IMG/VR virus record: IMGVR_UViG_3300049793_000366
Coordinates: 434,001 to 498,000 of that record
Length of the DNA: 64,000 bases
Direction: 5' to 3' (one strand)
The position numbers and the translations under genes are program-made. A model generated the notes under the pieces. That model worked only from the letters and a program-made list of their open reading frames with translations. It did not search any database and was not told the origin of the DNA. Below, piece after piece: positions 4,168 to 58,770 of the stretch (its first letter is position 1; each line of letters opens with the position of its first letter).

Positions 4168-4611
4168 ATGGATTATAAAGCCTACTATGCTAATTGTGGT
4201 TCTGAAAGGGAATATCCATATGATATACCGACATTAGAAGTTCTTGAATCTGATTCAGAATACATGATGTCTGTGTTCAAAGAAGTTGTACACAAGGTAG
4301 TTTTTAATGTGTGTGATGATACGGATTACAGTGATAGATTGCGTGATCCTCGATTTATGGCTACTAAGTTTTTTGGATTTACGGAGTCAATTCGCGGAGT
4401 AGCATTTATAAAATATTATAAGAAAGTAAAAAAAGAGGATAGATGGTTTATGGATTTCGTTAAAGATTTCGTTACCGTATATAAACCTAAAATAAGTAAG
4501 GATGAAAATGGCGAAACTATTCACGTAATTGATAGCGACCCAGTGAAGATACTAACACATCTTAAAGCATACAAGAGAGATATAGAATTAAAAACATTAC
4601 TAAATGAATAA
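4168..4611 (+). CDS. hypothetical protein, C-tag
   Basis: Start moved to the ATG after the promoter; ends KRDIELKTLLNE. Confidence 0.75.
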   Translation: MDYKAYYANCGSEREYPYDIPTLEVLESDSEYMMSVFKEVVHKVVFNVCDDTDYSDRLRDPRFMATKFFGFTESIRGVAFIKYYKKVKKEDRWFMDFVKDFVTVYKPKISKDENGETIHVIDSDPVKILTHLKAYKRDIELKTLLNE

Positions 4612-5350
4612 AGAACAATTAATAGCAGTATTTGAAAATACGACAAGTATAATTAACTCAACACCTGGGTTTCAATTATCAATTACGTCTAAACATAACA
4701 CGAATAGTATTTCAGTACCTCGTGGTGAAACTATTGCAAACATACAGACGATTAATTCTGATACAGTTTCAGCCGCTTTAGAGTATTCAAGAAAAGGAAG
4801 AACAGCAATTTTAAATATGGCATCATTTAAGAGACCAGGTGGTGGCGTTGCCAATGGTGCTAAAGCTCAAGAAGAATGCTTATTCAGATGTTCTAACTTA
4901 TCTAAAGTTATTTCTAATGAATTCTATCCATTGGGTGTAAATGAAGGTCTATACACAAGAGATGCAGTCTTCTTCAAGGATTTTAACTACAACCAAATTG
5001 AACCATTCATGGTAGACGTTATCACGGTTGCTGCGATTAATTTATCTAAAGAAGATAACCCTAAGGAAATATTAGATTCGTATGATGTTATTATGATGGA
5101 TAAGATGCGACTGATGTTCGATATGGCGTTACAGAATGGTTGTAAAAACATTATTCTTGGTGCTTGGGGTTGTGGTGTGTTTAGCAACAACCCAGTTAAC
5201 ATCGCGAGTATGTTTGAAGAAGTTATGATGAAGCGAAAAAACAGAGTTGATTCAACATATCACGAATGTTTCGAGAATATTATTTTTGCGGTTATCAATG
5301 ACCACAATTCGGTTGGTGATAACTATGATGTATTTAGTAAATTTTTTTAA
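4604..5350 (+). CDS. TIGR02452-family macrodomain / bacterial-type poly(ADP-ribose) glycohydrolase
   Basis: LNMASFKRPGGGVANGAKAQEECLFRCSNL and ILGAWGCGVFSN motifs. Confidence 0.85.
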   Translation: MNKEQLIAVFENTTSIINSTPGFQLSITSKHNTNSISVPRGETIANIQTINSDTVSAALEYSRKGRTAILNMASFKRPGGGVANGAKAQEECLFRCSNLSKVISNEFYPLGVNEGLYTRDAVFFKDFNYNQIEPFMVDVITVAAINLSKEDNPKEILDSYDVIMMDKMRLMFDMALQNGCKNIILGAWGCGVFSNNPVNIASMFEEVMMKRKNRVDSTYHECFENIIFAVINDHNSVGDNYDVFSKFF

Positions 5351-5351
5351 A

Positions 5352-5636
5352 ATGTATTTCTATCACGTAACAAATAAGGGAGAGAACGCAAAGTCACATT
5401 GGTTACTTGCTAAAGACGATACTGATGCGATTAGAATTGCTTCAACTGAAAAAGGCGTAGTTGACTTAGACTCATTGGAGAAGTTAAAACCATACGCTAA
5501 TATAAATAAACTAATTAAAGAAGGTAAGGCTGGTTTACTTGCCGCTAAAATTTTAGGAATGAAGGCATCTGACCTTATTGGTGGTAAAAAACCAAAACAG
5601 ATTGAAGATCCTTGGTTTCTATATAAAGAAGTATAA
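5352..5636 (+). CDS. hypothetical protein
   Basis: ATG 5352 immediately after the upstream stop; co-oriented. Confidence 0.7.
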   Translation: MYFYHVTNKGENAKSHWLLAKDDTDAIRIASTEKGVVDLDSLEKLKPYANINKLIKEGKAGLLAAKILGMKASDLIGGKKPKQIEDPWFLYKEV

Positions 5637-5640
5637 ACAT

Positions 5641-6381
5641 ATGAGAGTATTTATTCCAAAAGGTTCACACGATTTTATTTCAAAAGAAGTTTTGAATGAG
5701 AATTGTTTTGCCGCGTTTTCTGGATTCAGTCTTATGGGTTGGGAAGTTATCTTCTATGATGCTAAAGAACAACCTGATAACTTACTTCGCTCTGATGTTG
5801 TAGTTGGTTATATAACTCATGTTAAACAAGCACTGAGAAAACTCGATATTGTACCACCAACTGAAATAGATTACCCAGAAGAATTGAATGAATACTTTGG
5901 TCGTAAGTTATGGAAGTCAACATTACACACTGTTTATAATGATGAAACAATGTGGCCAGTTTTTGTTAAACCAGTATTAGGAAAACAATTCAATGGTACA
6001 CTAGTTGAAAGTCTTACAAACTTGGTAGGTCTTGGTGCACAGGAAGACAGAGAGATATGGTGTTCAGAGCCAGTTAAGTTTGTATCTGAATATCGCTGTT
6101 TCGTTCGTTATGGGAAGGTTTTAGATGCAAGACGATATAAGGGTTCATTTAAACACATACCCGATTTTAATGTCATAGAACGTTGTATAGAAGACTTCAA
6201 AGGTCAACCAGCGGCTTATACATTAGACTTTGGTATAACAGAAGATGGTCGTTCACTTCTCATTGAAGTTAATGATGGATTTGCTTGTGGTTGTTATGGA
6301 TTACATAGCATCGATTATGCTAAATTTATGTCAGCAAGATGGCACCAAATGGTTGGCTTACCTGATCCATGTATCTTCTAA
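5641..6381 (+). CDS. ATP-grasp domain protein (DUF4343/R2K-like)
   Basis: DYPEEL..YFGRK, FVKP, SEYRCFV, AYTLDFG, LIEVNDGFACGCYG. Confidence 0.8.
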   Translation: MRVFIPKGSHDFISKEVLNENCFAAFSGFSLMGWEVIFYDAKEQPDNLLRSDVVVGYITHVKQALRKLDIVPPTEIDYPEELNEYFGRKLWKSTLHTVYNDETMWPVFVKPVLGKQFNGTLVESLTNLVGLGAQEDREIWCSEPVKFVSEYRCFVRYGKVLDARRYKGSFKHIPDFNVIERCIEDFKGQPAAYTLDFGITEDGRSLLIEVNDGFACGCYGLHSIDYAKFMSARWHQMVGLPDPCIF

Positions 6382-6635
6382 TGAAAACATTAAATGATTA
6401 TAATAAGTTTGAATTCATTGAAGATGAATTGGTTTATTTAGGAGAGAGTGAGAACTTTACATATGGTAAAACATACAGAATAGAAAACGATTACGATGTA
6501 AGTGATGATAGTGAGTATAGATTTTATATGGTATCACTAAAGAATGATAACTCATTATATGAGCGTGTACCAGGTAATAAGTTATGTAAGCTATCAGATT
6601 TTAGAAACGAAAAAATTGAAAATATAATAAAATGA
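6381..6635 (+). CDS. hypothetical protein, C-tag
   Basis: TAATG coupling; ends FRNEKIENIIK. Confidence 0.75.
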   Translation: MKTLNDYNKFEFIEDELVYLGESENFTYGKTYRIENDYDVSDDSEYRFYMVSLKNDNSLYERVPGNKLCKLSDFRNEKIENIIK

Positions 6636-7267
6636 AAAAGCAAATTTTAACAATCAACGCACAATCTTTTGTGGATGTAATTACAAATAGTTCATCTGAA
6701 TTATTTATTTGTAATACTGACAAATCTATTGATTTAGTTAATGAAATATTACAGGAGTTACTCAATGGTTATGTTGAGAGAAATGGTGGTGGTCCATCAT
6801 TCTCAGATTGCTTTGGTGCAATTGCTATCGTTGGTGATAACAACCAAACTGGTACATACTTCATCGATGATTTACCATTAACTGAACAAGATGCTTTAGA
6901 AGAGCGTAGAAAGGAAATAATCAAGGCACAGATTATCCGTGAGCTTGAGAAGGATCCATCTTGGGATAAAAAGAATTGGCAAGAAAGAGATAAAATTTCA
7001 GTTAAGAAAACAGAAGCACAATTCCTTGAATATAAAAGAGAAGAGAAACTTGCTACGGTTACCAGTGAGAAATCAAATCTACCTGAGTGGTGGTTCACTG
7101 GTGCTATGCCTAAGAAAAACTCTTGGGATTATGATTCACCAATGAGGTGGAGAGGAATGTACAAAGGTAAAATAATCATTGAGTCAGCAACAGACAATTC
7201 AATTCCATACGATTTATTCGATGAAATTGAATCAGCGTTTAATGCTGAAAGACACCACATGGGATAA
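6632..7267 (+). CDS. hypothetical protein with N-terminal DVITNSSSELF motif
   Basis: SFVDVITNSSSELFIC near the N-terminus; coupled to the radical SAM gene. Confidence 0.75.
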   Translation: MKKQILTINAQSFVDVITNSSSELFICNTDKSIDLVNEILQELLNGYVERNGGGPSFSDCFGAIAIVGDNNQTGTYFIDDLPLTEQDALEERRKEIIKAQIIRELEKDPSWDKKNWQERDKISVKKTEAQFLEYKREEKLATVTSEKSNLPEWWFTGAMPKKNSWDYDSPMRWRGMYKGKIIIESATDNSIPYDLFDEIESAFNAERHHMG

Positions 7268-7268
7268 T

Positions 7269-8123
7269 ATGAAAGTAAGAGAATTTAAAGATAAAAATTA
7301 TAAAGCTATTTTTCATAATGGTAAAACCATTAGGATAGCTACTGATGCGTCTAAACTAATTTCAGAGTTGGACTATCCTGAATTCTACGATGTTGCTATA
7401 AACAACAAATGTAAAGCTAATTGCTCTTACTGTTATGTTAGTGCAATGAAGGGTGGTGAGAACTGGGAGAATGTAACCACTCGCATTTCAAATTTCTTTT
7501 CAAAAATGACAACCAATCAAAGACCATTTCAGGTTGCGATTGGTGGTCATGGTGAACCTACATTGCATCCCGACTTCATTCCGGTATTGGAAACATTTCA
7601 TAAATTAGGAATTGTTCCAAACTATACTACGAATGGAATGCACGTAACAAATGACATCATTGATGCTACTAAGAAATATTCTGGTGGTGTTGCTATATCA
7701 TGTCACCCACACTTAGATAAGACTTGGAAGCAAGCAGTAGTTGATTATTCAAGTGCTGGTATCAAAACAAATTTACACATCATCGTTGGTGAGAGTGGTT
7801 CAGTTGATAGATTTAAAGATATCTACGCTGAGTTTGAAAATATAGTTGACTACTTTGTTATTCTACCATACATGGCTGTTGGTCGTGCTAAGGAAATAGA
7901 AGTTAAAAATGAATGGGATAAACTATTCAAAGAATTAAAAGACTACAACAGAGGTAAGGTTGCTTTTGGTGCTTTGTTCTATCCTTATTTAAAAGATAAC
8001 GAAGAAGGTGTTAAGTATTTAGATATCTCTTTATATGAGCCAGAGTTGATGTCTGGTTACATTATGTTTGACGTAGAAGAACCTATTGTCAGAAAATCCT
8101 CATACGACTTAGAGTACAAATGA
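7269..8123 (+). CDS. radical SAM protein
   Basis: CxxxCxxC (CKANCSYC), GGHGEPTLHPDF, NYTTNG; start moved to ATG 7269. Confidence 0.9.
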   Translation: MKVREFKDKNYKAIFHNGKTIRIATDASKLISELDYPEFYDVAINNKCKANCSYCYVSAMKGGENWENVTTRISNFFSKMTTNQRPFQVAIGGHGEPTLHPDFIPVLETFHKLGIVPNYTTNGMHVTNDIIDATKKYSGGVAISCHPHLDKTWKQAVVDYSSAGIKTNLHIIVGESGSVDRFKDIYAEFENIVDYFVILPYMAVGRAKEIEVKNEWDKLFKELKDYNRGKVAFGALFYPYLKDNEEGVKYLDISLYEPELMSGYIMFDVEEPIVRKSSYDLEYK

Positions 8124-8218: not shown

Positions 8219-10348
8219 ATGTCACAAAACTCAGAAGATTTAAAAAAGCACCGCCTTTACTCAGAAACAGAATTCGATATCAAAGCTTCCGCATCAGACG
8301 GTGGCGAGGATGATGAAGATGAAGGTAGTATGTTTAATAAGCCAAAGGCCGACACAAAATCAAAAACCCCAGTACTCGATAATTTCGGACGCGATTTAAC
8401 AAAAATGGCTGAAGAGGGTAAGTTAGATGCCATCGTAGGAAGAGACAAAGAGATAGAAAGGGTTTCCCAGATTCTATCTCGTAGAAAGAAAAACAATCCA
8501 ATTCTTATTGGTGAGCCAGGTGTTGGTAAATCTGCTGTAGCAGAAGGACTAGCACTTCGTATTGTTCAGAAGAAAGTATCACGTTTACTTTTTAATAAAA
8601 GAGTAGTGACATTGGACTTAGGTTCTATGGTTGCTGGTACTAAATATCGTGGTCAATTCGAAGAGCGAATGAAAGCTCTTATGAATGAACTTGAGAAGAA
8701 CAAAGATGTTATTTTATTCATTGATGAAATTCATACAATCGTTGGTGCCGGTGGTGCTAGTGGTTCACTTGATGCTTCTAATATGTTTAAACCACCATTA
8801 GCTCGTGGTGAAATACAAGTAGTAGGTGCTACAACCGTAGATGAATACCGTAAGCACATTGAAAAAGATGGTGCGTTAGAAAGAAGGTTTCAAAAAGTTG
8901 TTATTGAACCAGCTACACCAGAGGAAACTCTACAAATTCTTCATAACATCAAAGATAAATATGAAGACCACCACAACGTATTCTATTCAGAAGATGCTAT
9001 TGCGGCTTGCGTTAGTTTAACTACTCGCTATATGTCTGATAGACACTTACCTGATAAAGCTATTGATGCTTTGGATGAAGTTGGTTCTCGCGTTCACATC
9101 ACTAACATAAAAGTACCTCAAGAGATACTTGACATCGAGAAAAAAATCGAAGAGATTAAAACAGAAAAGAATCGTGTTGTTAAGAATCAAAAATACGAAG
9201 AGGCTGCTAAATTAAGAGATGTTGAAAAACAATTAATCAATCAATTAGATGATGCTCGTAAGAATTGGGAAGACGACCAAAAGAACAACCGAGAGATTGT
9301 TACAGAGGAACACGTTGCTCAAGTAGTATCGATGATGACTGGTATACCAGTTACAAAGATAGGACAATCTGAAGGTAAGAAGCTAATCGATATGTATAAA
9401 GAGTTATCTGGTAAGGTAATTGGACAAGATGATGCTTTAAAGAAAATTGTTAAATCAATTCAAAGAAGCCGTGTTGGTATGAAGGATCCTAATAGACCAA
9501 TCTTCTCTGGTATGTTAATTGGAAATTCAGGAGTTGGTAAAACAGAAATGGCTAAGCAATTAGCTAAGTATATGTTTGACTCAGAAGATGCATTAATCAG
9601 ATTAGATATGTCTGAGTTCATGGAGAAAATTGATGTAACTAAAATAATTGGTTCATCTGCGGGTTATGTTGGATTCGAAGAAGGTTCAGCATTCTTAAAC
9701 AAAGTTAGGTCAAAGCCATACTCAGTAATCTTATTAGATGAAATTGAGAAAGCACATCCAGAAATCTTCAATGTATTCTTACAAATGTTAGATGATGGTC
9801 AATTAAGTGATTCACATGGTAGAAAAATTAACTTCAAGAATTGTGTTATTCTTATGACATCGAATGTCGGAACAAAAGTAGTTAAAGACTTTGGTGCTGG
9901 TGTTGGATTTGTAACTCAAGCTAAGTCAACATCATCTAATGATGATTTAAAGGGTACACTTGAAAAAGAATTGAAAAAGAAATTCGCTCCTGAGTTCATT
10001 AACCGTCTTGATGATATCATTTACTTCAAAGATTTAACTAAAGAAGATATTGGTAGAATTGTTGACATCGAATTAAATAAATCACTTAATCGTTTGAAAA
10101 CAATGGGTTACGAAGCTGTAATCGAAGAGTCTTTAAAAGAACAGTTAATTGAATCTGGTTATGATCCTAACTATGGCGCAAGACCATTGAAGAGAGCAAT
10201 TCAGAGATTAGTTGATGATGCTCTTACTGATACATTACTTGAAGAGCCAGCAGTTGGATCTACTATGAGTATGGGATTCGATAAAGAAAAGGATGAGACA
10301 GTTATTACTGTTAAGAAGCCAAAAAAGAAACCAACAAAGAATGATTAA
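8219..10348 (+). CDS. clpC: ClpC-type AAA+ unfoldase lacking the N-terminal Clp-repeat domain
   Basis: Two Walker A motifs ([16 protein letters not shown]), Walker B, short UVR-like middle domain ([10 protein letters not shown]), ClpP-docking loop GVGF. Confidence 0.92.
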
Positions 10349-10601
10349 GGATTATAAAGACTACCCAATTCCTGGGCGTAAATATAAACACTACAAAGGT
10401 GGTGTGTATGAGATAGTTTCAATGGCTACTCATACTGAAACTCAGGAAGCTATCGTTGTCTATAAGTCTTTACTATTCGGTTCTTTATATGTTAGACCAT
10501 TAGATATCTGGAATAAGGTAGCATTGGATGACGATGAAGAAGAGGTAACTCGATTCGAATTGATTGACATAGAAGATGAAGATGAATACTATTGCTTATA
10601 A
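10341..10601 (+). CDS. DUF1653-like protein
   Basis: GRKYKHYKGGVYEIV..ATHTET..VVYKSL...YVRP. Confidence 0.8.
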   Translation: MIKDYKDYPIPGRKYKHYKGGVYEIVSMATHTETQEAIVVYKSLLFGSLYVRPLDIWNKVALDDDEEEVTRFELIDIEDEDEYYCL

Positions 10602-10631: not shown

Positions 10632-10652
10632 CAATTGATTAATAAATTAAAT

Positions 10653-11054
10653 ATGGAAGAAGAAAAAATACCAACATCATTACAAGAAGCAATTGACTTT
10701 TTAATAGAAGCTGATGCTAATTTAGGAATGGGAAGCGGAATGGGAATGAGAAACAGTTGGGGGTTATGGCACGGTTCAAAACTCGCGCAATGGTTTTATA
10801 GACATCAAATATACCATGCTGATGATATGAGTGGCATCATTATGGATTCTTATAAAAGAACTAAAAATGGTGAACCAATTGAGTTAAAAGAACAAATAGC
10901 TAAGTATCATAAACACTGGGAGATAAATCATGGACCAAACCATTTAAGCGAAATGAAAGCCATGATTGTTGAAAATCTTATTAAGATGCGGGCTGAAAAT
11001 CTTGATGAAATATTGAAAGATATTAACTCTGAGGATATTGAAGGTAAAAGCTAA
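10653..11054 (+). CDS. hypothetical protein (DUF6794-like), C-tag
   Basis: GMGMRNSWGLW...YHADDMSGII; MRAENLDEIL near the end. Confidence 0.65.
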   Translation: MEEEKIPTSLQEAIDFLIEADANLGMGSGMGMRNSWGLWHGSKLAQWFYRHQIYHADDMSGIIMDSYKRTKNGEPIELKEQIAKYHKHWEINHGPNHLSEMKAMIVENLIKMRAENLDEILKDINSEDIEGKS

Positions 11055-11361
11055 TATTTACAGCAGTATAGTCAAAGCCACTGACTCTGACATTTTGTAA
11101 TTCAGCACCACATTCTTTAGCAATATAGGGTAGAATTCCATTGTTGAGTTCTAATGCTTCATCGTTATTAACCGCATTTGGGAATCTCTCAGTAGCAGTT
11201 ACGCTGAATAGGTTATTTCCCATATTTCTTACTTGGACCTTCATTAATTCGAAGTTTTCGTTGTCGGATAGGTATGATTCTACATCAGATTCAATATCGT
11301 CCATATCAATTCTGCCTTTCATATTAAAAATAAATTTCTCATACTTTTGAAGGTGCTTCAT
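11023..11361 (-). CDS. hypothetical protein, N-motif
   Basis: Starts MKHLQKYEKF; AATATATA just upstream. Confidence 0.8.
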   Translation of the reverse strand: MKHLQKYEKFIFNMKGRIDMDDIESDVESYLSDNENFELMKVQVRNMGNNLFSVTATERFPNAVNNDEALELNNGILPYIAKECGAELQNVRVSGFDYTAVNISFYLQYPQS

Positions 11362-11402: not shown

Positions 11403-11418
11403 AATTAAACTGCCACAC
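11403..11418 (+). repeat. isolated copy of the 16-bp AATTAAAATGCCACAC repeat family
   Basis: AATTAAACTGCCACAC, 21 nt upstream of the recombinase ATG. Confidence 0.75.
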
Positions 11419-11439
11419 CATTATTCGATATAATCAACT

Positions 11440-12015
11440 ATGAATTCTATACTATTTACAAGGGTATCTACACCACAACAAACACACGATGAACAGGTTG
11501 ATACGCTGACTAAAATATCACAGGATAAAGGCTGGTCAATAGATACAGTATATCGCGAGGTTGGTTCTGGGCTTATTTCAGGTAATTTGAGGGAAACACT
11601 GACAACTATGTTGAAATACATACCAACAACCACAGTGTCAGTAGTAGCAGTTTCAAACATATCTAAGCTATCTTGTAGACCCAATGACGTAGAGAAATTA
11701 ATGACTTGGTTACATAGTAAGGGTATCTCAATATATGTTGCTAATCTTGATATTTTATCAATTGGTAATGAAGATATAATTAGAGAGCAAGCATTGTTAG
11801 CAGAGCAACAAATTAATCAAATGAAGAGTAATTATGTTGAGAGTAATAAACTACCAATTGGTAGAAAAGAGGGTTATAGAAAGCCTAAGATATCAATGAT
11901 GCTTGACCACAAAGATGTTGCTGATTTACTTAAGCAGGGATATTCTATACGAAAGGTTGGTGAAATGACTGGTAAAAGCACAACCACCGTACAAAAAGTT
12001 AAAAGATTATTGTGA
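11440..12015 (+). CDS. serine recombinase (resolvase/invertase family) with C-terminal HTH
   Basis: FTRVST..Q...Q catalytic motif, E.GSG, degenerate SKLSCR, C-terminal HTH GYSIRKVGEMTGKSTTTV. Confidence 0.8.
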   Translation: MNSILFTRVSTPQQTHDEQVDTLTKISQDKGWSIDTVYREVGSGLISGNLRETLTTMLKYIPTTTVSVVAVSNISKLSCRPNDVEKLMTWLHSKGISIYVANLDILSIGNEDIIREQALLAEQQINQMKSNYVESNKLPIGRKEGYRKPKISMMLDHKDVADLLKQGYSIRKVGEMTGKSTTTVQKVKRLL

Positions 12016-12286: not shown

Positions 12287-12318
12287 TTTGCAAATCCGCA
12301 TTTTAATCCGTACATTTG
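12287..12318 (+). promoter_or_regulatory. Bacteroidota-type promoter
   Basis: TTTG-N20-TACATTTG, ATG at 12323. Confidence 0.8.
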
Positions 12319-28574: not shown

Positions 28575-28744
28575 TGGAAAAAATTAAAAAAGAACAATTT
28601 GCTGTTTATGAGAAAAAACCAGCTCATCAAAAAGACGTTAATGGTATCATTTTAGCTCCATATAATACCAAAGAAGAGGCTGAAAAAGCTGGTACTAAAT
28701 ATGGTTACTCTGGGGATAACTATTATGTTGATAAATTAATATAG
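28574..28744 (+). CDS. small hypothetical protein (56 aa, absent from ORF track)
   Basis: TAATG-coupled, MEKIKKEQFAVYEKKP...YYVDKLI*, fills the gap. Confidence 0.6.
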   Translation: MEKIKKEQFAVYEKKPAHQKDVNGIILAPYNTKEEAEKAGTKYGYSGDNYYVDKLI

Positions 28745-28746
28745 AC

Positions 28747-28992
28747 ATGAGAGGATTTTGTAAATGTAGAGTAACATTCAAAAAAGATATACACACCTAC
28801 GTTGGTAACCAAATATATGAATACCGTATATATGGTAGTATGTATACCGTTGAGACACCATCACTGCTTAACCCAGATTTAAGTGTCGGGTATCAATTCA
28901 GTCAAAAAGCATTTGATGAGCAATTTGATGAGTTTACCCAGCAACAAATAAGAGAAATGAGATTAGATACCGTATTAAAAGACAATGAGTAA
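28747..28992 (+). CDS. CxC-family small protein, C-tag
   Basis: FCKCRV...GNQIYEY...FDEQF...IREMRLDTVL. Confidence 0.8.
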   Translation: MRGFCKCRVTFKKDIHTYVGNQIYEYRIYGSMYTVETPSLLNPDLSVGYQFSQKAFDEQFDEFTQQQIREMRLDTVLKDNE

Positions 28993-29251
28993 AGAATCAC
29001 AACTAATAGAAGGCTATGAGAATTTCAAAGGCTTTGAAGTAAACTCTATTGTCATATGCGTAGATGCCAAAGATTGCATATCCATCAAAGAAGGTGATGA
29101 GTATACCGTATTGAACCAACCACACTATCATAACATGAGAGGCGTTGGTGTAGAGGTTAGTAGTCCAGGTACTTCTAATTTTTATCATCCAGGTCGATTC
29201 ATCAGTAAAGAAGAACTAAGAAATAAGAAAATCCAAACCATATTAGAATGA
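28985..29251 (+). CDS. small protein, C-tag
   Basis: VICVDA...EGDEYTV...LRNKKIQTIL. Confidence 0.8.
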   Translation: MSKESQLIEGYENFKGFEVNSIVICVDAKDCISIKEGDEYTVLNQPHYHNMRGVGVEVSSPGTSNFYHPGRFISKEELRNKKIQTILE

Positions 29252-29550
29252 CTGTACAATTTCATAGAACAGACACCGAGAAGTTTATACTACTCATCTT
29301 CACTGGTGGATCTCCGCTCGATAACCGCAAAGCTCTGGATAACTACCTAAGCGATTTAAAAGTTGATGATAACGGAGAATATGTAGATTATAACCGCTAT
29401 GACTTCTGTGATATCAAATACTATATGGATGTCTTATGCCTCTTATATAAGAAACCACACAGCTTAAACGATGAAGATTTTGTTGATTATAATAAGAACT
29501 ATCCAACAGCACTGAAAAGAATTAAAGGACTAAATAAATTACTGGTATGA
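29248..29550 (+). CDS. hypothetical protein
   Basis: ATGA coupling; ends RIKGLNKLLV (tag-like). Confidence 0.7.
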   Translation: MTVQFHRTDTEKFILLIFTGGSPLDNRKALDNYLSDLKVDDNGEYVDYNRYDFCDIKYYMDVLCLLYKKPHSLNDEDFVDYNKNYPTALKRIKGLNKLLV

Positions 29551-29741
29551 GCCAACGAATGGAAGAATTTAACTACGTAAGTGGTGGGCATCACAATAAA
29601 TTAATTGTGGTTGATATATTATATATGCTAAAGAAACAAATGCGAACAGAAGCTTTTCATAGACCAATTGAAATAGTATCAGACTCAAAAGAACTTCTTA
29701 TAATCGCGGATTATGTCAAAAACAATAAGATAAAATTCTAA
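29547..29741 (+). CDS. hypothetical protein
   Basis: ATGA coupling. Confidence 0.65.
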   Translation: MSQRMEEFNYVSGGHHNKLIVVDILYMLKKQMRTEAFHRPIEIVSDSKELLIIADYVKNNKIKF

Positions 29742-30002
29742 ATGAAATGTATCTGTCATAACGATTTGCTTGAAGGAACAAGGTCAGCTTTCATCAAAGG
29801 TAACATATATGAATATAGTATCTACAACAACGGTAAAACCATATCACTTGGTGGAACTTTCATTGACTTCGAAGGATTCGAATATGTGGCAGACAAACAA
29901 GCACTATCAATTGATATGTTCACCCATTACTTTAGAGATTTAGAAGAACACAGAGATTTAACCATCAATACACTATTAGAATGGCAATGTACCAAGAAGT
30001 AA
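29742..30002 (+). CDS. CxC-family small protein, C-tag
   Basis: MKCIC...KGNIYEY...FTHYF...HRDLTINTLL. Confidence 0.8.
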   Translation: MKCICHNDLLEGTRSAFIKGNIYEYSIYNNGKTISLGGTFIDFEGFEYVADKQALSIDMFTHYFRDLEEHRDLTINTLLEWQCTKK

Positions 30003-30232
30003 GAGATATAGTTTGCACATCATCCAAACTATACCCACAATATATTAAAGGTAAACACTATCGTGGTAACTTTAGGTTATATTGCTGGGATGTCGTAGAT
30101 GAATACAATAACATGATGAACTATGGTATAGATAAATTCAATGAGTATTTCACCGAGTTAGAAGAATTAAGAGATAATAAGATTAAAACAATATTAGATA
30201 ATGAAGTTCAAACCAATATTCAGCATAGGTGA
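29981..30232 (+). CDS. CxC-family small protein, C-tag
   Basis: IVCT...KGKHY...FNEYF...LRDNKIKTIL. Confidence 0.8.
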   Translation: MAMYQEVRDIVCTSSKLYPQYIKGKHYRGNFRLYCWDVVDEYNNMMNYGIDKFNEYFTELEELRDNKIKTILDNEVQTNIQHR

Positions 30233-30431
30233 CTTAGTATATGTGGACACCAATACAATAGCAACCATTCTAAGAACCCGCGCCAATATAGAATTTCTCA
30301 TCGAATACGAAATGTCAAAGAAATACATCAATATGTCAGCTAAACGAAAATACTGGGTCTATTATGAAGTCTTGGTCAAATATAACACAGGTATCATACG
30401 CGAACAAAAGCTCAATAATCTATTACAATGA
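30201..30431 (+). CDS. small protein, C-tag
   Basis: FSIGDLV...IREQKLNNLL. Confidence 0.75.
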   Translation: MKFKPIFSIGDLVYVDTNTIATILRTRANIEFLIEYEMSKKYINMSAKRKYWVYYEVLVKYNTGIIREQKLNNLLQ

Positions 30432-30661
30432 AAGCAAAATGTATTAAACCAATCATAGATGAATTCGGAGACCATCAAATGGAACTAATACTGAATGAGA
30501 ACTATGAATATAGAATAATACTGACCGATAAACCGGCTGATAGGTTCATTTATAAACTCATCGTAAAAAATAAAGAATATTCATTAACAACAGAGTATTT
30601 CGATAGATATCTACTCGACATAACCATTCATAGAGATAACCAACTCGATACACTATTATGA
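30428..30661 (+). CDS. CxC-family small protein, C-tag
   Basis: MKAKCIK...FDRYL...HRDNQLDTLL. Confidence 0.8.
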   Translation: MKAKCIKPIIDEFGDHQMELILNENYEYRIILTDKPADRFIYKLIVKNKEYSLTTEYFDRYLLDITIHRDNQLDTLL

Positions 30662-30927
30662 GCAAGAAAGAAGAAATATCACTCATCTGTATAGAAGATA
30701 TTGTAGACCTGTTCACCAAAGTCGCACAGTTTAAGAAAGGCATAACCTACAAAGCATTCTTAGACCCACTACACATTGTCTACATCTATAATGAATCAGG
30801 CGCACTCTTCCAAAAGTATAACCTGATGAATACCTATGAACACGATGAATATACAAAACACTTCGAGATACCCTGGAGACACCGCGATAATAAAATAAAC
30901 AATATATTGGAAGAACATGGGAACTGA
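30658..30927 (+). CDS. CxC-family small protein, C-tag
   Basis: LICIED...KGITY...HRDNKINNIL. Confidence 0.8.
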   Translation: MSKKEEISLICIEDIVDLFTKVAQFKKGITYKAFLDPLHIVYIYNESGALFQKYNLMNTYEHDEYTKHFEIPWRHRDNKINNILEEHGN

Positions 30928-31153
30928 ATTAAGAATATGTCGGTGCGTCAATGATGCCTATATCGGTTACCGATTAACTATTGAATATAAATTCAGCGTG
31001 GTGTATGTAAACCAACACGTAGATATCTATCGGGTCTATTTGGAAGATAGGTCAACCTTTAACCATTTCACCAAACTACAATTCAATAAATGCTTCATCG
31101 ATTTAACCGCCATAGAAGAAAGAGATACTAACATTCAAAAAGTATTAGAGTAA
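30917..31153 (+). CDS. CxC-family small protein, C-tag
   Basis: ICRCVN...FNKCF...ERDTNIQKVL. Confidence 0.8.
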   Translation: MGTELRICRCVNDAYIGYRLTIEYKFSVVYVNQHVDIYRVYLEDRSTFNHFTKLQFNKCFIDLTAIEERDTNIQKVLE

Positions 31154-31374
31154 TGGAAAAGGAAGAAGAATTAATCATCCGGTGCATAAAAGACACACCC
31201 AGCTTTTTTAAAGATAAATGCTATAAAGCAGTTATCAATCATATAGACCACGAGATTAACATATTCAGTGAATATTTAAAGGTAGAATTTGAATATCCAT
31301 CCTATTACTTCAATGAACATTTCCAATTAGAATGGCAACGCCGTGACCAAATTATAGACTCAATACTCAAATGA
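31153..31374 (+). CDS. CxC-family small protein, C-tag
   Basis: IRCIKD...FNEHF...RRDQIIDSIL. Confidence 0.8.
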   Translation: MEKEEELIIRCIKDTPSFFKDKCYKAVINHIDHEINIFSEYLKVEFEYPSYYFNEHFQLEWQRRDQIIDSILK

Positions 31375-31631
31375 AAGCAATCTGTATTAAACCCATCATT
31401 GAACACATAAACTGGGAAACCATCACTCTATCCGAAGGAGTCATATATGAGTATGAACTGATGATTGATACCGCCCAAGCCACCTTCGGAAGAGTCTATC
31501 AAGTTATGATAAATAATAACCCATATAGTATGAAACCAGAATTCTTTAACAAACATCTTAAAACCATTGACGAACACCGAGAGAAACAATTAGACAAACT
31601 ATTAAATGAAGATAAAAGCCATCTGTATTAA
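31371..31631 (+). CDS. CxC-family small protein, C-tag
   Basis: MKAICIK...EGVIYEY...HREKQLDKLL. Confidence 0.8.
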   Translation: MKAICIKPIIEHINWETITLSEGVIYEYELMIDTAQATFGRVYQVMINNNPYSMKPEFFNKHLKTIDEHREKQLDKLLNEDKSHLY

Positions 31632-31857
31632 AACATTCAAAGTCGGCTATGGAATCAAAGAATCCAACTTCATCGAAGGGGAAATCTATGACTATGAACG
31701 ACTACTCATCGGTATTATGAATAATGATACCAGAGAATATAGAATACATTCGGGTGATAACCATTTCAAATTAAACCCGCAATTCTTTAAACAACACCTG
31801 ATGGACTTAGAACTATACAGAGAGAAACAATTAAAAGACGTATTGAATGAGCGATAG
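31606..31857 (+). CDS. CxC-family small protein, C-tag
   Basis: KAICIK...EGEIYDY...YREKQLKDVL. Confidence 0.8.
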   Translation: MKIKAICIKTFKVGYGIKESNFIEGEIYDYERLLIGIMNNDTREYRIHSGDNHFKLNPQFFKQHLMDLELYREKQLKDVLNER

Positions 31858-32221
31858 AATGATACCAGAACAATTAGATACACTTATCTGTATTGAAGAC
31901 TATTATGAAAAACTCACCTATGGTAACTATAAACTGAACATCCTATTCAAAAAAGGCAAACAATACATCGCCTATGAACTCAGAGGTATAGTCTATGTAC
32001 TAAATGAACAAAGCCTATTCGTACAGTTTAACCTTCTCACCAGTAAAGAACTATCCGATTACAATAGACACTTTACCGTACTAAGTACACACAGAGAAAC
32101 ATTGATTGATTCTATTATTACTAATAACATTGAGAAAGATGAAACGGTTAAAGAAAGCGAGCCGCAGGCGAGCTGTAGAGCTTCCGAACCCTTAAATTCA
32201 TTAAATCCTCCGCGAGATTAG
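31847..32221 (+). CDS. CxC-family protein, C-tag followed by an extension
   Basis: LICIED...KGKQY...HRETLIDSII. Confidence 0.75.
   Translation: MSDRMIPEQLDTLICIEDYYEKLTYGNYKLNILFKKGKQYIAYELRGIVYVLNEQSLFVQFNLLTSKELSDYNRHFTVLSTHRETLIDSIITNNIEKDETVKESEPQASCRASEPLNSLNPPRD
32156..32174 (+). other. GNA-triloop mini-hairpin with tandem G.A mismatches
   Basis: AGC-GA-GCC-GCA-GGC-GA-GCT, GC-rich in an AT-rich context. Confidence 0.6.
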
Positions 32222-32243
32222 TCGAAATTAACCATATTCCACC

Positions 32244-32480
32244 ATGATAACATTTACCAAACAATGCATCTGTATAAACGACAAGAACCCAGTATCACAG
32301 GAACAAACCCTGTTCAGAAAAGGAACCATCTATGGCTACGAATTTATGACAGAAGGTATCTATAAAGACGAATACGTTCTGAGCATTAATACAATGGGTC
32401 TTCCACCAGATATGTTCAACCACTATATGATGGACTTACAAGAATACAGAGAGAAACTACTAAACAACCTAACCGATTAG
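32244..32480 (+). CDS. CxC-family small protein, C-tag
   Basis: QCICIND...KGTIYGY...YREKLLNNL. Confidence 0.8.
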   Translation: MITFTKQCICINDKNPVSQEQTLFRKGTIYGYEFMTEGIYKDEYVLSINTMGLPPDMFNHYMMDLQEYREKLLNNLTD

Positions 32481-32483
32481 AAA

Positions 32484-32702
32484 ATGGGCTATATTACCAC
32501 CGTCATATGTACCGAAACTGTTAAGAATATTACCATAGAGTATAAGAAAGGTCAACACTATGAAGCATACTTCTACCTCGATAAAGTTAGTATCAACCAT
32601 AACAATACCTCGATAGAATATGAATGTGATGAATTTTTTAAAGAACACTTCAAACCACTCTATAAACACCGAGATAATCAAATCAATAACATATTAGATT
32701 AA
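32484..32702 (+). CDS. CxC-family small protein, C-tag
   Basis: VICTET...KGQHYE...FKEHF...HRDNQINNIL. Confidence 0.8.
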   Translation: MGYITTVICTETVKNITIEYKKGQHYEAYFYLDKVSINHNNTSIEYECDEFFKEHFKPLYKHRDNQINNILD

Positions 32703-33022
32703 TGTACACCGAAGAAGAATTAGAATATACCTGGCAAAACTATCATAAGAATCAAAAACATTGGTTCAAATGTATATGTATAAAATCATTCGGTATATAC
32801 GAAGCCGGTAACATATATGAATATAACATAAACAAAACAAATGTCACCGATACCTCAAACGGCTATAAATCATATATCAAATGGGATTTCTATGTAAAGT
32901 TCGAGAAATACCCAAAACTATACACAGATACCAATATAGTAAGATATAACCAATTCATAGAATGTATGATAGATGTATCAAAATATAGAGAGAATCAAAT
33001 CAATAACATATTAGAACAATGA
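32702..33022 (+). CDS. CxC-family protein, C-tag
   Basis: KCICIK...AGNIYEY...YRENQINNIL. Confidence 0.8.
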   Translation: MYTEEELEYTWQNYHKNQKHWFKCICIKSFGIYEAGNIYEYNINKTNVTDTSNGYKSYIKWDFYVKFEKYPKLYTDTNIVRYNQFIECMIDVSKYRENQINNILEQ

Positions 33023-33252
33023 TTCAGATAGATTCATGTACAACCTGTCCAAATTGTGGTAATGGCTCATTATCAGAAGTTAAAGTATATCTAAATAAGA
33101 ATGTACTTGGACTAACATATAAGAAATACTCACATACTAAACAAGTATGCCTGTTCAACTATAAAACAAGCATGGGTATATGTAACTATGACTCAGATAA
33201 TACATTAGACGTTATAAGAGATAATAAACTTCAAACACTATTAGACCAGTAA
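33019..33252 (+). CDS. small Zn-ribbon-like protein, C-tag
   Basis: CPNCG...C...C; IRDNKLQTLL. Confidence 0.75.
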   Translation: MIQIDSCTTCPNCGNGSLSEVKVYLNKNVLGLTYKKYSHTKQVCLFNYKTSMGICNYDSDNTLDVIRDNKLQTLLDQ

Positions 33253-33491
33253 TGATAAACACACTAATCAAACAAGGATTCGTCTATGATATGGAAGATA
33301 ACCTCTGGTATGATGAAAACATCTACCGTATCAAATATAAACTCAGAGTCAGTATTCTAAAACGTATAGACGGTTCTTATAAAGCTACACTATATACAGG
33401 TGGGTATAATAACTCAATGACCATTAATAACTCATATGAATTAGAAGCCGCTATAAGAGATTCACAATTAGAACGATTAATGAAAGTATGA
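33252..33491 (+). CDS. small protein, C-tag
   Basis: Ends IRDSQLERLM. Confidence 0.75.
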   Translation: MINTLIKQGFVYDMEDNLWYDENIYRIKYKLRVSILKRIDGSYKATLYTGGYNNSMTINNSYELEAAIRDSQLERLMKV

Positions 33492-33730
33492 AAGTTATAT
33501 GTATTAAGAACTATAAACATACCGGCTTCGATATGATGTTCTTTATGGATAATTTATATGATGCTGATATATCCAAAGATATGGCTTATGTATGTAGCAA
33601 TCAATACCTGATGGGTAAACAAGTATCCTTTGGTATGTCCTATGATGAATTCTATGAACACTTTAAAGTATTAGCAGATTATAGAGAAGAACAAATTAAT
33701 AACCTTCTTATAGAAAACAAACATGATTAA
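33488..33730 (+). CDS. CxC-family small protein, C-tag
   Basis: MKVICIK...FYEHF...YREEQINNLL. Confidence 0.8.
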   Translation: MKVICIKNYKHTGFDMMFFMDNLYDADISKDMAYVCSNQYLMGKQVSFGMSYDEFYEHFKVLADYREEQINNLLIENKHD

Positions 33731-34013
33731 TAAAATTATATGTATCAAAAGCTATGTACAAAAAGGTTCAATATCCTCTTATAGCTTTACTTTCTTAGAA
33801 GGACATACATATGAGTATAATCCATTAGAAGAGGTTGGTGGTGTGATAGTAACACTATATACAGGAGAATATAGGAACACACATAGAGTAGGATTCAATA
33901 TTACCCGTGGTGAATTCTATGAACACTTTAAGATACTAAAAGATTATAGAGAAGAACAAATAGACAGCTTGCTTGCGAACGAAGTGAGCAGTCTGAATAA
34001 TTTAAACAGTTAG
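33723..34013 (+). CDS. CxC-family small protein, C-tag
   Basis: IICIK...EGHTYEY...FYEHF...YREEQIDSLL. Confidence 0.8.
   Translation: MINKIICIKSYVQKGSISSYSFTFLEGHTYEYNPLEEVGGVIVTLYTGEYRNTHRVGFNITRGEFYEHFKILKDYREEQIDSLLANEVSSLNNLNS
33974..33990 (+). other. GNA-triloop mini-hairpin with tandem G.A mismatches
   Basis: TGC-GA-AC-GAA-GT-GA-GCA. Confidence 0.6.
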
Positions 34014-34025
34014 AACAATTACACT

Positions 34026-34244: not shown

Positions 34245-34392
34245 AATGAGTTAAAATGTATATGCTAAATTTGACTGTTTTCGCAGATTTACATGACGTT
34301 TATGTGAAGCCTGTTTGCGGGAACTATTATAATGCCACACTTGTACCACCTTAGTTGTCAGTCTATGTCTAACCTTGTCAGCCAGTCAGAAC

Positions 34393-34497: not shown

Positions 34498-34713
34498 ATG
34501 GAAACACCAATCACTGATAAACAAATAGTTGAGTATTTAAAATACTTGAAGACCGAATTCACTGAACTATGTAAAACTCCGGATAGGAGTATAAAAGAAA
34601 TGTCTTACCGTAGTGTATTACTTGAGATGTTTCAGATTGAGACTAACAATGAGAAACACTTCGATGTACTTAGTAAAACACTAAATGACTATCGTATATC
34701 AAAGCGTAATTAA
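34498..34713 (+). CDS. hypothetical protein
   Basis: Start moved to ATG 34498; stop codon supplied by the repeat (AAT TAA). Confidence 0.65.
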   Translation: METPITDKQIVEYLKYLKTEFTELCKTPDRSIKEMSYRSVLLEMFQIETNNEKHFDVLSKTLNDYRISKRN

Positions 34714-34790
34714 AATGCCACACCTCAAAGCCTTATTCGGTGAGCATTCAAATTATAATGCCACAGTCTGACGGAGTTAAAGTGCCACAC

Positions 34791-34809
34791 TGCTCGTCTC
34801 CGACTCGCA
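34791..34809 (-). other. GNA-triloop mini-hairpin with tandem G.A mismatches
   Basis: Minus strand TGC-GA-GTC-GGA-GAC-GA-GCA. Confidence 0.6.
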
Positions 34810-34842
34810 TTAAACTACCACACCTTTCGGACATATAATGGT

Positions 34843-35070
34843 ATGTTTCAATCTATGAATGAGTTAGAGGTAAAGGCTGACGGTATGTTATGCTACAATG
34901 GTGTAAAGCTTCTTAGTGTTGAGGCTTTGAGTGACTTTGTATCTCTAACTGGGTTTGAACCTTTACAGGCTTTACAGACGTACTATATAACCACTCAAAC
35001 ACATCAGAGGAATCAAAAGCTTGAGATTCTATTTGATGGAGTTAAAGTGCCACACCTCAAACCGTTATAG
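34843..35070 (+). CDS. hypothetical protein, C-tag
   Basis: QRNQKLEILF, then runs through a repeat copy. Confidence 0.65.
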   Translation: MFQSMNELEVKADGMLCYNGVKLLSVEALSDFVSLTGFEPLQALQTYYITTQTHQRNQKLEILFDGVKVPHLKPL

Positions 35071-35101
35071 GGAGAATAAGTTAGAAGTCTTGTTGAATTA
35101 A
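35036..35101 (+). CDS. 21-aa mini-ORF consisting mostly of the C-tag
   Basis: MELKCHTSNRYRENKLEVLLN*, lying between two repeat copies. Confidence 0.35.
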   Translation: MELKCHTSNRYRENKLEVLLN

Positions 35102-35156
35102 AATGCCACACCTCAACGCCTTATCTGGTAAGGATTAGAATTAAAATGCCACACTT

Positions 35157-35381
35157 ATGTTTAATATAGGAGATAGAGTTAAAGAATTGGGTAGGGATTG
35201 TTATAGGGATGAGCCTATTGAGATAATATCTACGCTCAAGGAGAATAAGCGATATCATTTAAAGTATTTGAATGTATTTAATGTACAGGGTACTAATATG
35301 TTATTCTGGGTTCATGAAGATGATATTATCTTAGACAAGGAGTATTATAGGGATAAGAAGATTAATGAGGTGTTGAATTAA
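35157..35381 (+). CDS. small protein (KOW-like start), C-tag
   Basis: FNIGDRV...YRDKKINEVLN*; flanked by repeats on both sides. Confidence 0.8.
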   Translation: MFNIGDRVKELGRDCYRDEPIEIISTLKENKRYHLKYLNVFNVQGTNMLFWVHEDDIILDKEYYRDKKINEVLN

Positions 35382-35392
35382 AATGCCACACT

Positions 35393-35812: not shown

Positions 35813-35823
35813 GTCTTGTTGTA

Positions 35824-36030: not shown

Positions 36031-36073
36031 ATTATGATTAATTTATTAGTTGATATCTTTAGTGTATGGTTTG

Positions 36074-36105: not shown

Positions 36106-36143
36106 TGAAAACAACTTAGATAGGGTTGTATCGTATAATTAAA

Positions 36144-36401
36144 ATGCCACACCAACCATATCATATGTTATTACCGAAGGTTCGAAATGTATCACCGAGT
36201 ACATTGGGTCAGAATATACAGATTATTAACACTGCGTATATGATACCAATGCGAAAGTGTTGTGATTGTGGTAATGTGATTAATATAATAGATGATGAGT
36301 TTGAGACAAAGCCTCGTATGTTTTTGTGGGTTAAGTTGGAGACTGATTATAGGTGTTGTGTATGTATGCGTGATAATAAGATTCGTAAGATATTTAAGTG
36401 A
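36144..36401 (+). CDS. CxxC...CxxC small protein, C-tag
   Basis: ATG supplied by the repeat (MPH); CCDCG...CCVC-MRDNKIRKIF. Confidence 0.7.
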   Translation: MPHQPYHMLLPKVRNVSPSTLGQNIQIINTAYMIPMRKCCDCGNVINIIDDEFETKPRMFLWVKLETDYRCCVCMRDNKIRKIFK

Positions 36402-36625: not shown

Positions 36626-36626
36626 A

Positions 36627-36658: not shown

Positions 36659-36662
36659 AAAT

Positions 36663-36788
36663 ATGAAAGCATTCTTAAGAATAATCACTTTTTATAGAGT
36701 AAATGATGTAGACTACGTACCTAATGGGTGCTTAGGATTAATATTCTGGCTTATAGTGATAGGTATAGTATTAGCAATCGCGAATTAA
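36663..36788 (+). CDS. 41-aa membrane peptide (absent from ORF track)
   Basis: MKAFLRIITF...CLGLIFWLIVIGIVLAIAN*; promoter upstream; stop lies within the repeat. Confidence 0.6.
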   Translation: MKAFLRIITFYRVNDVDYVPNGCLGLIFWLIVIGIVLAIAN

Positions 36789-36789
36789 A

Positions 36790-37047
36790 ATGCCACACCA
36801 CTTCAAATGTATATGTAAGAATGAGTATCTACAATCCGGTAGGGAAGATACTTTAGTTATCTTCATACTCAATGAGATATATCTGGTGGAGAATACCGCG
36901 AGTGGGAACTACTTATTAACTGGTAATATCCGTAGTGGTGATAATATTTTGCGTGAAATAGTATCTTTAGATGATGTAGGCTTTAAACGCTATATGATGC
37001 ACATAGACGAGTATAGGGAGAATAAGTTAGAAGCATTGCTTAATTAG
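36790..37047 (+). CDS. CxC-family small protein, C-tag
   Basis: ATG from the repeat (MPH); KCICK...YRENKLEALLN. Confidence 0.8.
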   Translation: MPHHFKCICKNEYLQSGREDTLVIFILNEIYLVENTASGNYLLTGNIRSGDNILREIVSLDDVGFKRYMMHIDEYRENKLEALLN

Positions 37048-45116: not shown

Positions 45117-45499
45117 CAGCACCCGAACTAATAGAGTATTTAGAGCGATTGGGATTCATTATGGATTCTTATACCAGTATGATGGAGTTCATCACCCTAC
45201 ATCTACGCGATAAAGATATTGGTGCTAATGTGAATAACCTAAGTGGTGTATCAATAAGTATCTGTAAGAGTAAAGGAGTCTATCATCAACAGTATAGTGA
45301 TAAGCCAAACATATTCAGTATTAAGTATGAGCTAACGGATCATATAGACTTCAATACGAAGATGCCCGTTAGAAGCCATCAGATGAATCACTATACAATA
45401 GATGGTGTGTTGGAGTTCCTCGTAGAGAATCGAATTGGTAAACCGGATGTATTAAGAGAAGCTATCATTGAATTAAACTGCCACAGGCTCTTGAATTAA
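45113..45499 (+). CDS. hypothetical protein ending within repeat copies
   Basis: The last codons (LNCHRLLN*) are encoded by two repeat copies. Confidence 0.75.
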   Translation: MTAPELIEYLERLGFIMDSYTSMMEFITLHLRDKDIGANVNNLSGVSISICKSKGVYHQQYSDKPNIFSIKYELTDHIDFNTKMPVRSHQMNHYTIDGVLEFLVENRIGKPDVLREAIIELNCHRLLN

Positions 45500-45589
45500 A
45501 ATGCCACACCAACTAATTAAACTACCACATCCGAAACCCTTACTGGATAAGACTTAGAATTATAATGCCACACTTAGAAATGTGGATAA
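45471..45589 (+). repeat. second cluster of the 16-bp repeat (4 copies) plus a perfect DnaA box
   Basis: Copies at 45471, 45494, 45515, 45558; TGTGGATAA at 45581-89. Confidence 0.85.
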
Positions 45590-58766: not shown

Positions 58767-58770
58767 GTTA

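What the first reader, a model, noticed from the sequence alone, without database searches (positions are those of the whole stretch)
11403..12015. Serine recombinase gene preceded by a lone copy of the 16-bp repeat
Seen: AATTAAACTGCCACAC at 11403-11418, 23 kb from the main cluster and 21 nt before the resolvase-family ATG. The enzyme keeps the catalytic Ser (FTRVST) and an HTH, but the usual DRLxR motif reads SKLSCR. Established: resolvases autoregulate by binding their res sites. Inference: this protein binds the repeat family, either recombining cassettes or resolving dimers, or acting as a catalytically degenerate DNA-binding factor at the origin-like clusters.
Basis: partly seen in the sequence, partly recalled or inferred. 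Interest (0 to 1): 0.68.

Follow-up and report, generated by a model that had tools for sequence, protein, structure and literature searches.

The report
Megaphage resolvase-like protein and its binding sites
A giant phage of Bacteroidota carries a resolvase-family gene with a weakened catalytic site, and the 16-bp repeat before it is very probably that protein's own DNA-binding site, which also marks the borders of small-gene cassettes elsewhere in the genome.

Summary
AATTAAACTGCCACAC lies at 11403-11418, 21 nt before a 191-aa Resolvase+HTH gene (11440-12015). Fifteen more copies, all on the + strand, lie at 34.3-36.8 and 45.5 kb.

The window belongs to a megaphage of at least 508 kb, with Bacteroidota-type promoters.

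- **Own-gene copy.** The site is kept before the gene in seven orthologous lineages (59-82% identity). A TATAA[T/A/C] box always follows it after 9-10 nt, while the distance to the ATG varies.
- **Wider family.** Homologues at 25-32% identity carry arrays of head-to-tail half-sites before their genes, and the half-site changes with the HTH recognition helix. The homologue whose helix is closest to the phage's has TGTGGTA; the phage has TGTGGCA. So the 16-mer is most likely the protein's cognate half-site.
- **Catalysis.** The phage clade has lost R71 (Cys), and this window's subclade has K at R68. Helix E is 14 residues shorter than in the outgroup. No dyad or inverted site exists, so catalysis is doubtful.
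- **Clusters.** The closest relative phage keeps the site clusters (sites almost unchanged, spacers about 70%), but the genes between sites differ.

Best reading: an autoregulated, probably crippled recombinase that acts as a site-specific DNA-binding factor. Cassette recombination is not excluded. This is a new variant of a known kind.

The parts
11403..11418 (+). Own-gene copy of the site (variant with C at position 8, so it has no ATG). It occupies about -38 to -23 relative to the start predicted from the TATAAT box.
   Evidence: Conserved in orthologous loci L118-L124, L162-L165 and L171.
11429..11434 (+). TATAAT box, 10 nt after the site and 5 nt before the ATG.
   Evidence: A TATAA[T/A/C] box lies 9-10 nt after the site in all seven orthologous lineages, while the box-to-ATG distance varies from 4 to about 25 nt.
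11440..12015 (+). 191-aa small serine-recombinase homologue: catalytic domain, helix E (111-135), GRKEG arm and a C-terminal HTH.
   Evidence: Pfam. AlphaFold2 model with pLDDT 84. Foldseek matches to TP901-1, Sin, Tn3 and gamma-delta resolvase. It is the only PF00239 gene in the record.
11023..11361 (-). Divergent 112-aa ORF that shares the 78-bp intergenic region with the recombinase gene.
   Evidence: Also present in the L119 lineage but absent in L118.
34325..34340 (+). Single site (TATTATAATGCCACAC).
   Evidence: It is orthologous to the relative's site inside a 79%-identical block.
34708..34823 (+). Cluster A: four head-to-tail sites spaced 43, 24 and 33 bp, directly before ORF 34843-35070. 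The first three form a composite element (site, 27-bp spacer, site, 8-bp spacer, site).
   Evidence: Orthologous cluster in L251. Composite element aligned.
35040..35154 (+). Cluster B: three head-to-tail sites spaced 56 and 43 bp. It overlaps the 3' end of ORF 34843-35070 and ends 2 nt before ORF 35157-35381.
35376..35391 (+). Single site. Its TAA is the stop of ORF 35157-35381, and the next gene is convergent.
36137..36152 (+). Single site in a divergent intergenic region. ORF 36144-36401 can start at the site's ATG.
   Evidence: A host-type promoter for the - strand gene lies beside it.
36783..36798 (+). Single site at a gene junction. Its TAA ends ORF 36663-36788 and its ATG starts ORF 36790-37047.
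   Evidence: In the relative the homologous gene starts 5 nt after the site.
45471..45573 (+). Cluster C: four head-to-tail sites spaced 23, 21 and 43 bp, at the 3' end of ORF 45113-45499 and before a convergent gene.

Best explanation
The gene encodes a small serine-recombinase homologue, and its C-terminal HTH and GRKEG arm recognise the asymmetric site. On the opposite strand the site reads as an outer box GTGTGGCA followed by an A/T-rich inner part. The conserved copy before its own gene overlaps the upstream half of a promoter with a TATAAT box, so it would serve as an autoregulatory operator, as res does for Tn3-type resolvases. In this phage and its closest relative the same site has multiplied into head-to-tail arrays at the borders of small-gene cassettes in a variable region. 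The protein would bind there as a regulatory or architectural factor. The clade has Cys in place of R71, this subclade has Lys in place of R68, helix E is shortened, and no dyad site exists, so I take strand exchange to be lost or very slow. Shown: the site, its conservation, the co-variation with the HTH, and the residue changes. Inferred: binding, autoregulation and loss of catalysis.
For: 1. All seven orthologous lineages keep [G/T/A]ATTAAACTGCCAC[A/G]C before the gene, followed after 9-10 nt by a TATAA[T/A/C] box, although the flanks and the distance to the ATG diverge.
2. In about 50 homologues from metagenomes, the region upstream of the gene holds arrays of direct half-sites plus an inverted copy near the ATG. 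The half-site follows the recognition helix: KSSGTVQKVK goes with TGTATCA, GISTVQRVK with GTGTGTTCA, S[V/I]STVQR[L/I/V]K with TGTATTCA, and KSTKTVQKVK (L180) with TGTGGTA. The phage has KSTTTVQKVK and TGTGGCA.
3. In L180 the inverted half-site lies in the spacer of a TTTG-N20-TATATTTG promoter, which looks like an operator.
4. The alignment puts C79 at the place of R71 in all eight phage-clade members of alignment A1, with K76 or R76 at R68, and helix E is 14 residues shorter than in the outgroup. In Tn3 resolvase, R68K, R71A and R71K cut cleavage to about 0.001 of the reference activity and abolish resolution in vivo (PMC2794168).
5. There are no inverted or dyad copies in the 508 kb. In Sin, head-to-tail sites are regulatory and the dimer bound to them is catalytically inactive (PMC2428073).
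6. In cluster A only 2 bases differ across the four sites between two phages, whereas the spacers are about 70% identical and carry an indel.
7. Two megaphages that lack the gene also lack the site.
Against: No binding experiment exists. R8, S10, E40 (at the D36 position) and R51 (at the R45 position) stay invariant or nearly so in the clade, and a basic residue always follows C79, so some catalysis may survive. Gene content differs between sites in two related phages, which would also fit active recombination. The sites have no fixed position relative to downstream start codons (0-35 nt), so a simple promoter-operator role does not explain the clusters. The 73%-identity relative has no further copy in the 50 kb examined, so the arrays are lineage-specific.
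Confidence: 0.5

Rival explanations
1. The protein is still an active recombinase. The sites, in particular the composite three-site elements, are its recombination targets. Exchange between direct copies excises, inserts or shuffles small-gene cassettes, giving an integron-like or PeSL-like system driven by a serine recombinase.
For: All sites share one orientation. They lie at gene borders and supply stop and start codons. Between the window and L251 the genes between conserved sites differ or are reordered. One 236-bp replacement ends exactly where TTAAAATGCCACAC begins, 14 bp from the outer end, which is where a crossover centre would be expected. Composite elements recur five times in two phages. 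S10 and R8 are conserved.
Against: There is no dyad crossover site. R71 is lost and R68 is K here. Helix E is short. Repeats of this length can also drive homologous recombination without any site-specific enzyme, as shown for T4-type PeSLs (PMC2839356). The contigs of the only run that holds this DNA show no alternative junction, but contigs cannot show rare forms.
Confidence: 0.22
2. The motif is read by something else: a promoter element for a phage sigma factor or an activator, or an RNA-level operator at translation start regions. On this view its place before the recombinase gene says nothing about that protein.
For: The fixed 9-10 nt spacing to a TATAAT-type box before the gene resembles a T4 MotA-box middle promoter (from my own knowledge). 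The record encodes a sigma-70 family ORF. Most copies lie 0-35 nt before + strand ORF starts, and several contain the start codon itself.
Against: The half-site pattern and its co-variation with the HTH helix recur across unrelated genomic contexts. Copies at convergent gene ends (35376, cluster C) and the variable distance to start codons do not fit a core promoter. No RNA structure or Rfam family was found.
Confidence: 0.15
3. The clusters are iterons of a replication origin, and the protein is their initiator or regulator.
For: The repeats are direct, clustered and spaced at roughly whole numbers of helical turns (21-24, 33, 43 and 56 bp).
Against: There are three clusters plus single copies at gene junctions. 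No replication gene was seen next to them, cumulative GC skew shows no turning point tied to them, and serine recombinases are not known initiators.
Confidence: 0.05

Closest known systems
Tn3 / gamma-delta resolvase with its res site
   Same: The domain order is the same (catalytic domain, helix E, arm, HTH). Full-length structural matches were found. Binding sites lie before the recombinase gene, where binding represses transcription (textbook knowledge).
   Different: res consists of three dyad sites. Here only one half-site precedes the gene, R68 and R71 are not kept, helix E is shorter, and many distant copies exist.
Sin resolvase res (site I dyad, HU/IHF spacer, site II head-to-tail repeats)
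   Same: Both have head-to-tail binding motifs with a conserved spacer between sites, and Sin is among the best sequence and structure matches. The outgroup relatives have exactly this layout before their genes.
   Different: The phage clade has no site I dyad. Spacings are 21-56 bp rather than about 16-17 bp. The arrays lie 23-34 kb from the gene.
PeSL cassettes of T4-type phages (PMC2839356, PMC4122927)
   Same: Both are short conserved repeats between small ORFs of a hyperplastic region, with gene content that differs between close relatives at the repeats.
   Different: PeSLs are a sigma-70-like promoter plus a terminator hairpin and recombine by homology. Here no hairpin is supported, and the repeat matches the half-site of an encoded recombinase homologue.
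Integron cassette arrays
   Same: In both, one-orientation sites separate single small genes.
   Different: Integrons use a tyrosine integrase next to attI and folded attC sites. None of that is present here.
Gin, Hin and Pin DNA invertases (the name JGI gives some homologues)
   Same: Same size and domain order.
   Different: Invertases need inverted sites flanking a segment. No inverted copy exists in the 508 kb.

Membership tests
Small serine recombinases (resolvase/invertase type) | Resolvase catalytic-domain fold followed by helix E and a C-terminal HTH | tested here: met
   Pfam PF00239 at 1e-14 plus HTH families. AlphaFold2 model and Foldseek matches.
Small serine recombinases (resolvase/invertase type) | Nucleophilic Ser10 and Arg8 | tested here: met
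   R8 and S10 are nearly invariant across alignment A1; the only exception is the N-terminally truncated outgroup protein P0020.
Small serine recombinases (resolvase/invertase type) | Catalytic arginines R68 and R71 (Tn3 numbering) | tested here: not met
   K76 and C79 are aligned to them. The outgroup keeps ELSR[L/I/V]GR. Their functional weight is shown in PMC2794168.
Small serine recombinases (resolvase/invertase type) | Dyad-symmetric crossover site | tested here: not met
   There is no inverted half-site near the gene, in the clusters or anywhere in the record.
Small serine recombinases (resolvase/invertase type) | Strand-exchange activity | not testable with these tools
   This needs biochemistry.
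Sin-type res | Head-to-tail regulatory half-sites | tested here: met
   Clusters A, B and C and the composite element.
Sin-type res | Adjacent site I dyad next to the gene | tested here: not met
   It is present in outgroup loci.
DNA invertase system | Inverted sites flanking a segment | tested here: not met
   All 16 sites are on one strand.
PeSL-type regulatory cassette | Promoter plus stable stem-loop terminator | tested here: not met
   Fold z-scores range from -1.6 to +1.0. The sites have no fixed promoter geometry.
Iteron origin | Adjacent initiator or replication genes and a skew turning point | tested here: inconclusive
   Skew is uninformative. The neighbouring ORFs were not scanned for function; a few upstream genes are named only through relatives' Pfam hits.

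The most novel reading that the evidence does not exclude
A megaphage lineage uses a serine-recombinase homologue and one-orientation, half-site-only targets to excise, capture and reorder small-gene cassettes. This would be an integron-like gene-shuffling system built on serine rather than tyrosine recombination, working without a dyad crossover site.
Probability: 0.15. Interest if true: 0.85.

Novelty: new variant of a known kind. Interest (0 to 1): 0.58.

Why it matters
The work pairs an uncultivated megaphage protein with a predicted DNA target using sequence data alone, so the prediction can be tested directly with a 19-bp oligonucleotide. If the protein is a crippled recombinase kept as a DNA-binding factor, it would be an example of a serine recombinase domesticated by a virus. 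If it still recombines, the site arrays would explain how the variable small-gene regions of huge phages are reshuffled. The observed pairing of recognition helix and half-site (SSG with TATC, ST[T/K] with TGG[C/T]) may also help predict targets for this recombinase family.

Tried and rejected
- **Exact-pattern scans of IMG/VR** for the 14-mer and for paired cores gave only chance single hits.
- **The search for related loci with the single protein** in viral contigs found nothing.
- **Walking 40 kb downstream of the 73%-identity orthologue** on a 709-kb contig found no further site. That record could not be searched whole.
- **Sequencing runs.** Only one DNA run, probably the source soil metagenome, holds the region, and there is no RNA run. 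The laid contigs are identical to the window and show no real joint; the one listed joint comes from the repeated promoter word. Expression and rare junctions therefore remain untested.
- **Homodimer prediction** returned no verdict and is not used as evidence either way.
- **RNA explanations.** There are no Rfam hits and no significant folds.
- **Phage RNA polymerase as the reader of the motif.** No T7-like polymerase (though that Pfam search rang in no control genome either, so it is uninformative) and no RNA polymerase beta-subunit (PF00562) match was found in the record.
- **A plain host promoter.** The host-type promoter is a different, well-defined motif.
- **The idea that the repeat is only a coding junction of a paralogous gene family** (…LN stop, then MPH…). 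This is rejected because clusters have 21-56 bp spacing without genes, and because the copy before the recombinase is conserved in seven lineages.

Full report
**Setting.** The window is positions 434,001-498,000 of a 507,910-bp IMG/VR virus record with 33.7% G+C. The recombinase protein is also on record from a 711,805-bp contig. Its ClpB gene is 73% identical in DNA to two uncultured phages of 634-642 kb. The genome is packed with small ORFs. It uses a strong promoter of the Bacteroidota type, TTTG-N19-21-TAnnTTTG, whose core word TCCGTATATTT occurs 63 times on both strands following gene direction, often with the ATG only 4-6 nt after it. The host is therefore very probably a member of the Bacteroidota.

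**The observation.** The 16-mer family has 16 members, all on the + strand, confined to a 35-kb stretch of the record.

**The protein.**
- Pfam, a profile search of solved structures, and a confident AlphaFold2 model (pLDDT 84) with Foldseek all identify a small serine recombinase. It has a catalytic domain, helix E, a GRKEG arm and an HTH.
- Eight close homologues (59-82% identity) form a clade found on phage-like contigs. In several of them the gene sits just downstream of ClpB.
- All eight phage-clade members of alignment A1 read IS[K/R]LSC[R/K] where the wider family reads ELSR[L/I/V]GR. The helix-D register in the profile alignments puts Cys79 at the place of R71 and Lys76 at R68.
- In Tn3 resolvase, R68K, R71A and R71K reduce cleavage about a thousand-fold and abolish resolution in vivo (PMC2794168).
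- Helix E is 14 residues shorter than in the outgroup.
- R8, S10, E40 and R51 are kept, so I cannot call the protein dead, only doubtful.

**The own-gene copy.** In all seven orthologous lineages the same site precedes the gene and is followed after 9-10 nt by a TATAA[T/A/C] box. The rest of the spacer is not conserved, and the distance from the box to the ATG runs from 4 to about 25 nt. The conserved unit is therefore 'site plus -10-like box', which places the site at about -38 to -23 of a promoter. This promoter differs from the phage's standard one. One relative has a second such unit before another small gene on the other strand (L165).

**Who reads the site.** This is the decisive evidence.
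- More distant homologues (25-32% identity, canonical active site) occur in small integrative elements, together with a large serine recombinase and a restriction-modification pair, and on many metagenomic contigs.
- Upstream of their genes lie two to four head-to-tail repeats and one inverted copy next to the ATG. This is a Sin-like res layout (PMC2428073).
- Each repeat has an outer box followed by an A/T-rich stretch, and the box changes with the recognition helix: TGTATCA, GTGTGTTCA, TGTATTCA or TGGTCA for four helix types.
- The single homologue whose helix (KSTKTVQKVK) is nearest to the phage's (KSTTTVQKVK) has TGTGGTA. The reverse complement of the phage 16-mer reads GTGTGGCA followed by TTTTAATT.
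- In that homologue the inverted half-site lies inside the spacer of a canonical host-type promoter.

This co-variation across unrelated contexts is why I put the sub-claim 'the 16-mer is this protein's cognate half-site' at about 0.8.

**The clusters.**
- The closest relative phage (recombinase 82% identical, neighbouring gene 76%) has 15 copies, or 16 counting one variant with A for C in the box. All have one orientation and lie in the corresponding region.
- Cluster A is orthologous between the two phages. Only 2 bases differ across its four sites, whereas the 27-nt spacer has 9 mismatches and another spacer has a 10-nt indel.
- A composite element (site, conserved 27-bp spacer, site, about 8 bp, site) recurs five times in the two phages, two of the copies lacking the third site.
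- The genes between sites are not the same. One window gene (34432-34713) replaces about 45 bp of the relative, and homology resumes exactly at the site. Other modules are absent or reordered.
- Sites lie 0-35 nt before + strand ORF starts. Four ORFs start at a site's ATG and several ORFs end at a site's TAA.
- More distant relatives show only the own-gene copy in the stretches available.
- Two megaphages without the gene also lack the site.

**Weighing.**
- The sites are under selection and mark cassette borders.
- A canonical serine-recombinase crossover needs a dyad bound by a dimer, and none exists. With the active-site changes, this makes a binding-only role the better bet (0.5).
- Active cassette recombination stays alive at about 0.2, because the mosaic pattern is what it would produce. 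Homologous recombination at repeats gives the same pattern in T4-type phages (PMC2839356).
- A different reader of the motif (sigma factor, activator or RNA-binding protein) gets 0.15, and origin iterons 0.05.

**Limits.** No experiment, RNA data or read-level data were available. About 200 kb of the phage genome lies outside the record I could search. The co-variation table rests on inspection of about 45 upstream regions and a simple repeated-word count, not on a formal statistical model.

Noticed in passing
window 12287-12318 (+), 36628-36658 (+), 58741-58771 (-) and about 20 more; 63 in the record: There is a highly conserved Bacteroidota-type promoter (TTTGGTAATCCGGAATATTATCCGTATATTTA-like). 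The ATG often follows only 4-6 nt after the -7 box, which implies leaderless or near-leaderless mRNAs.
   Followed up: partly
window 8219-10348 (+); L122 5442-9616: A ClpB-type double-AAA chaperone gene is conserved across the clade (89% amino-acid identity to the 709-kb relative). In one lineage (L122, L123) it is split into two ORFs by a 506-aa ORF of unknown function.
   Followed up: no
window about 28700-37050 (+): There is a tandem array of about 30 small ORFs of 70-100 aa. Many are paralogous, with an N-terminal x-C-[I/M]-[C/K] motif and a C-terminal YRxxxLxxLLN. Only the last few are separated by the recombinase sites.
   Followed up: partly
window 4604-8123 (+): By synteny with relatives, these genes carry Pfam hits to PARG_cat_microb, R2K_2/R2K_3 and Radical_SAM. 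DUF1653 (10293-10601) and DUF6794 (10635-11054) follow.
   Followed up: no
G000:C1:112839-113045 (outside the window): A 209-aa ORF matches Sigma70_r2 (8e-18). No RNA polymerase beta-subunit (PF00562) match was found in the record. A search for a T7-like polymerase (PF00940) also found nothing, but it rang in no control genome, so it is uninformative.
   Followed up: no
L251 1900-3210: The closest relative encodes a 436-aa protein with an RNA polymerase alpha C-terminal domain (PF03118), a few kb from its site clusters.
   Followed up: no
whole record G000: IMG/VR classes the 508-kb record as 'provirus', yet the same protein lies on a 711,805-bp contig and relatives are phage contigs of about 709 kb. 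The record is probably a trimmed part of a free megaphage genome.
   Followed up: no
L166 1876-9341; L168: The outgroup recombinase sits in a 5-6 kb element with a large serine recombinase and a restriction-modification pair. The element is inserted in a Mg-chelatase/ComM-like gene, and one contig looks circular.
   Followed up: no
window 34461-34471 and 34767-34774; L251 equivalents: A second short conserved word (C/T)AGTCTGACGG occurs next to CCACAG-type sites and at the left border of the 236-bp replacement.
   Followed up: no
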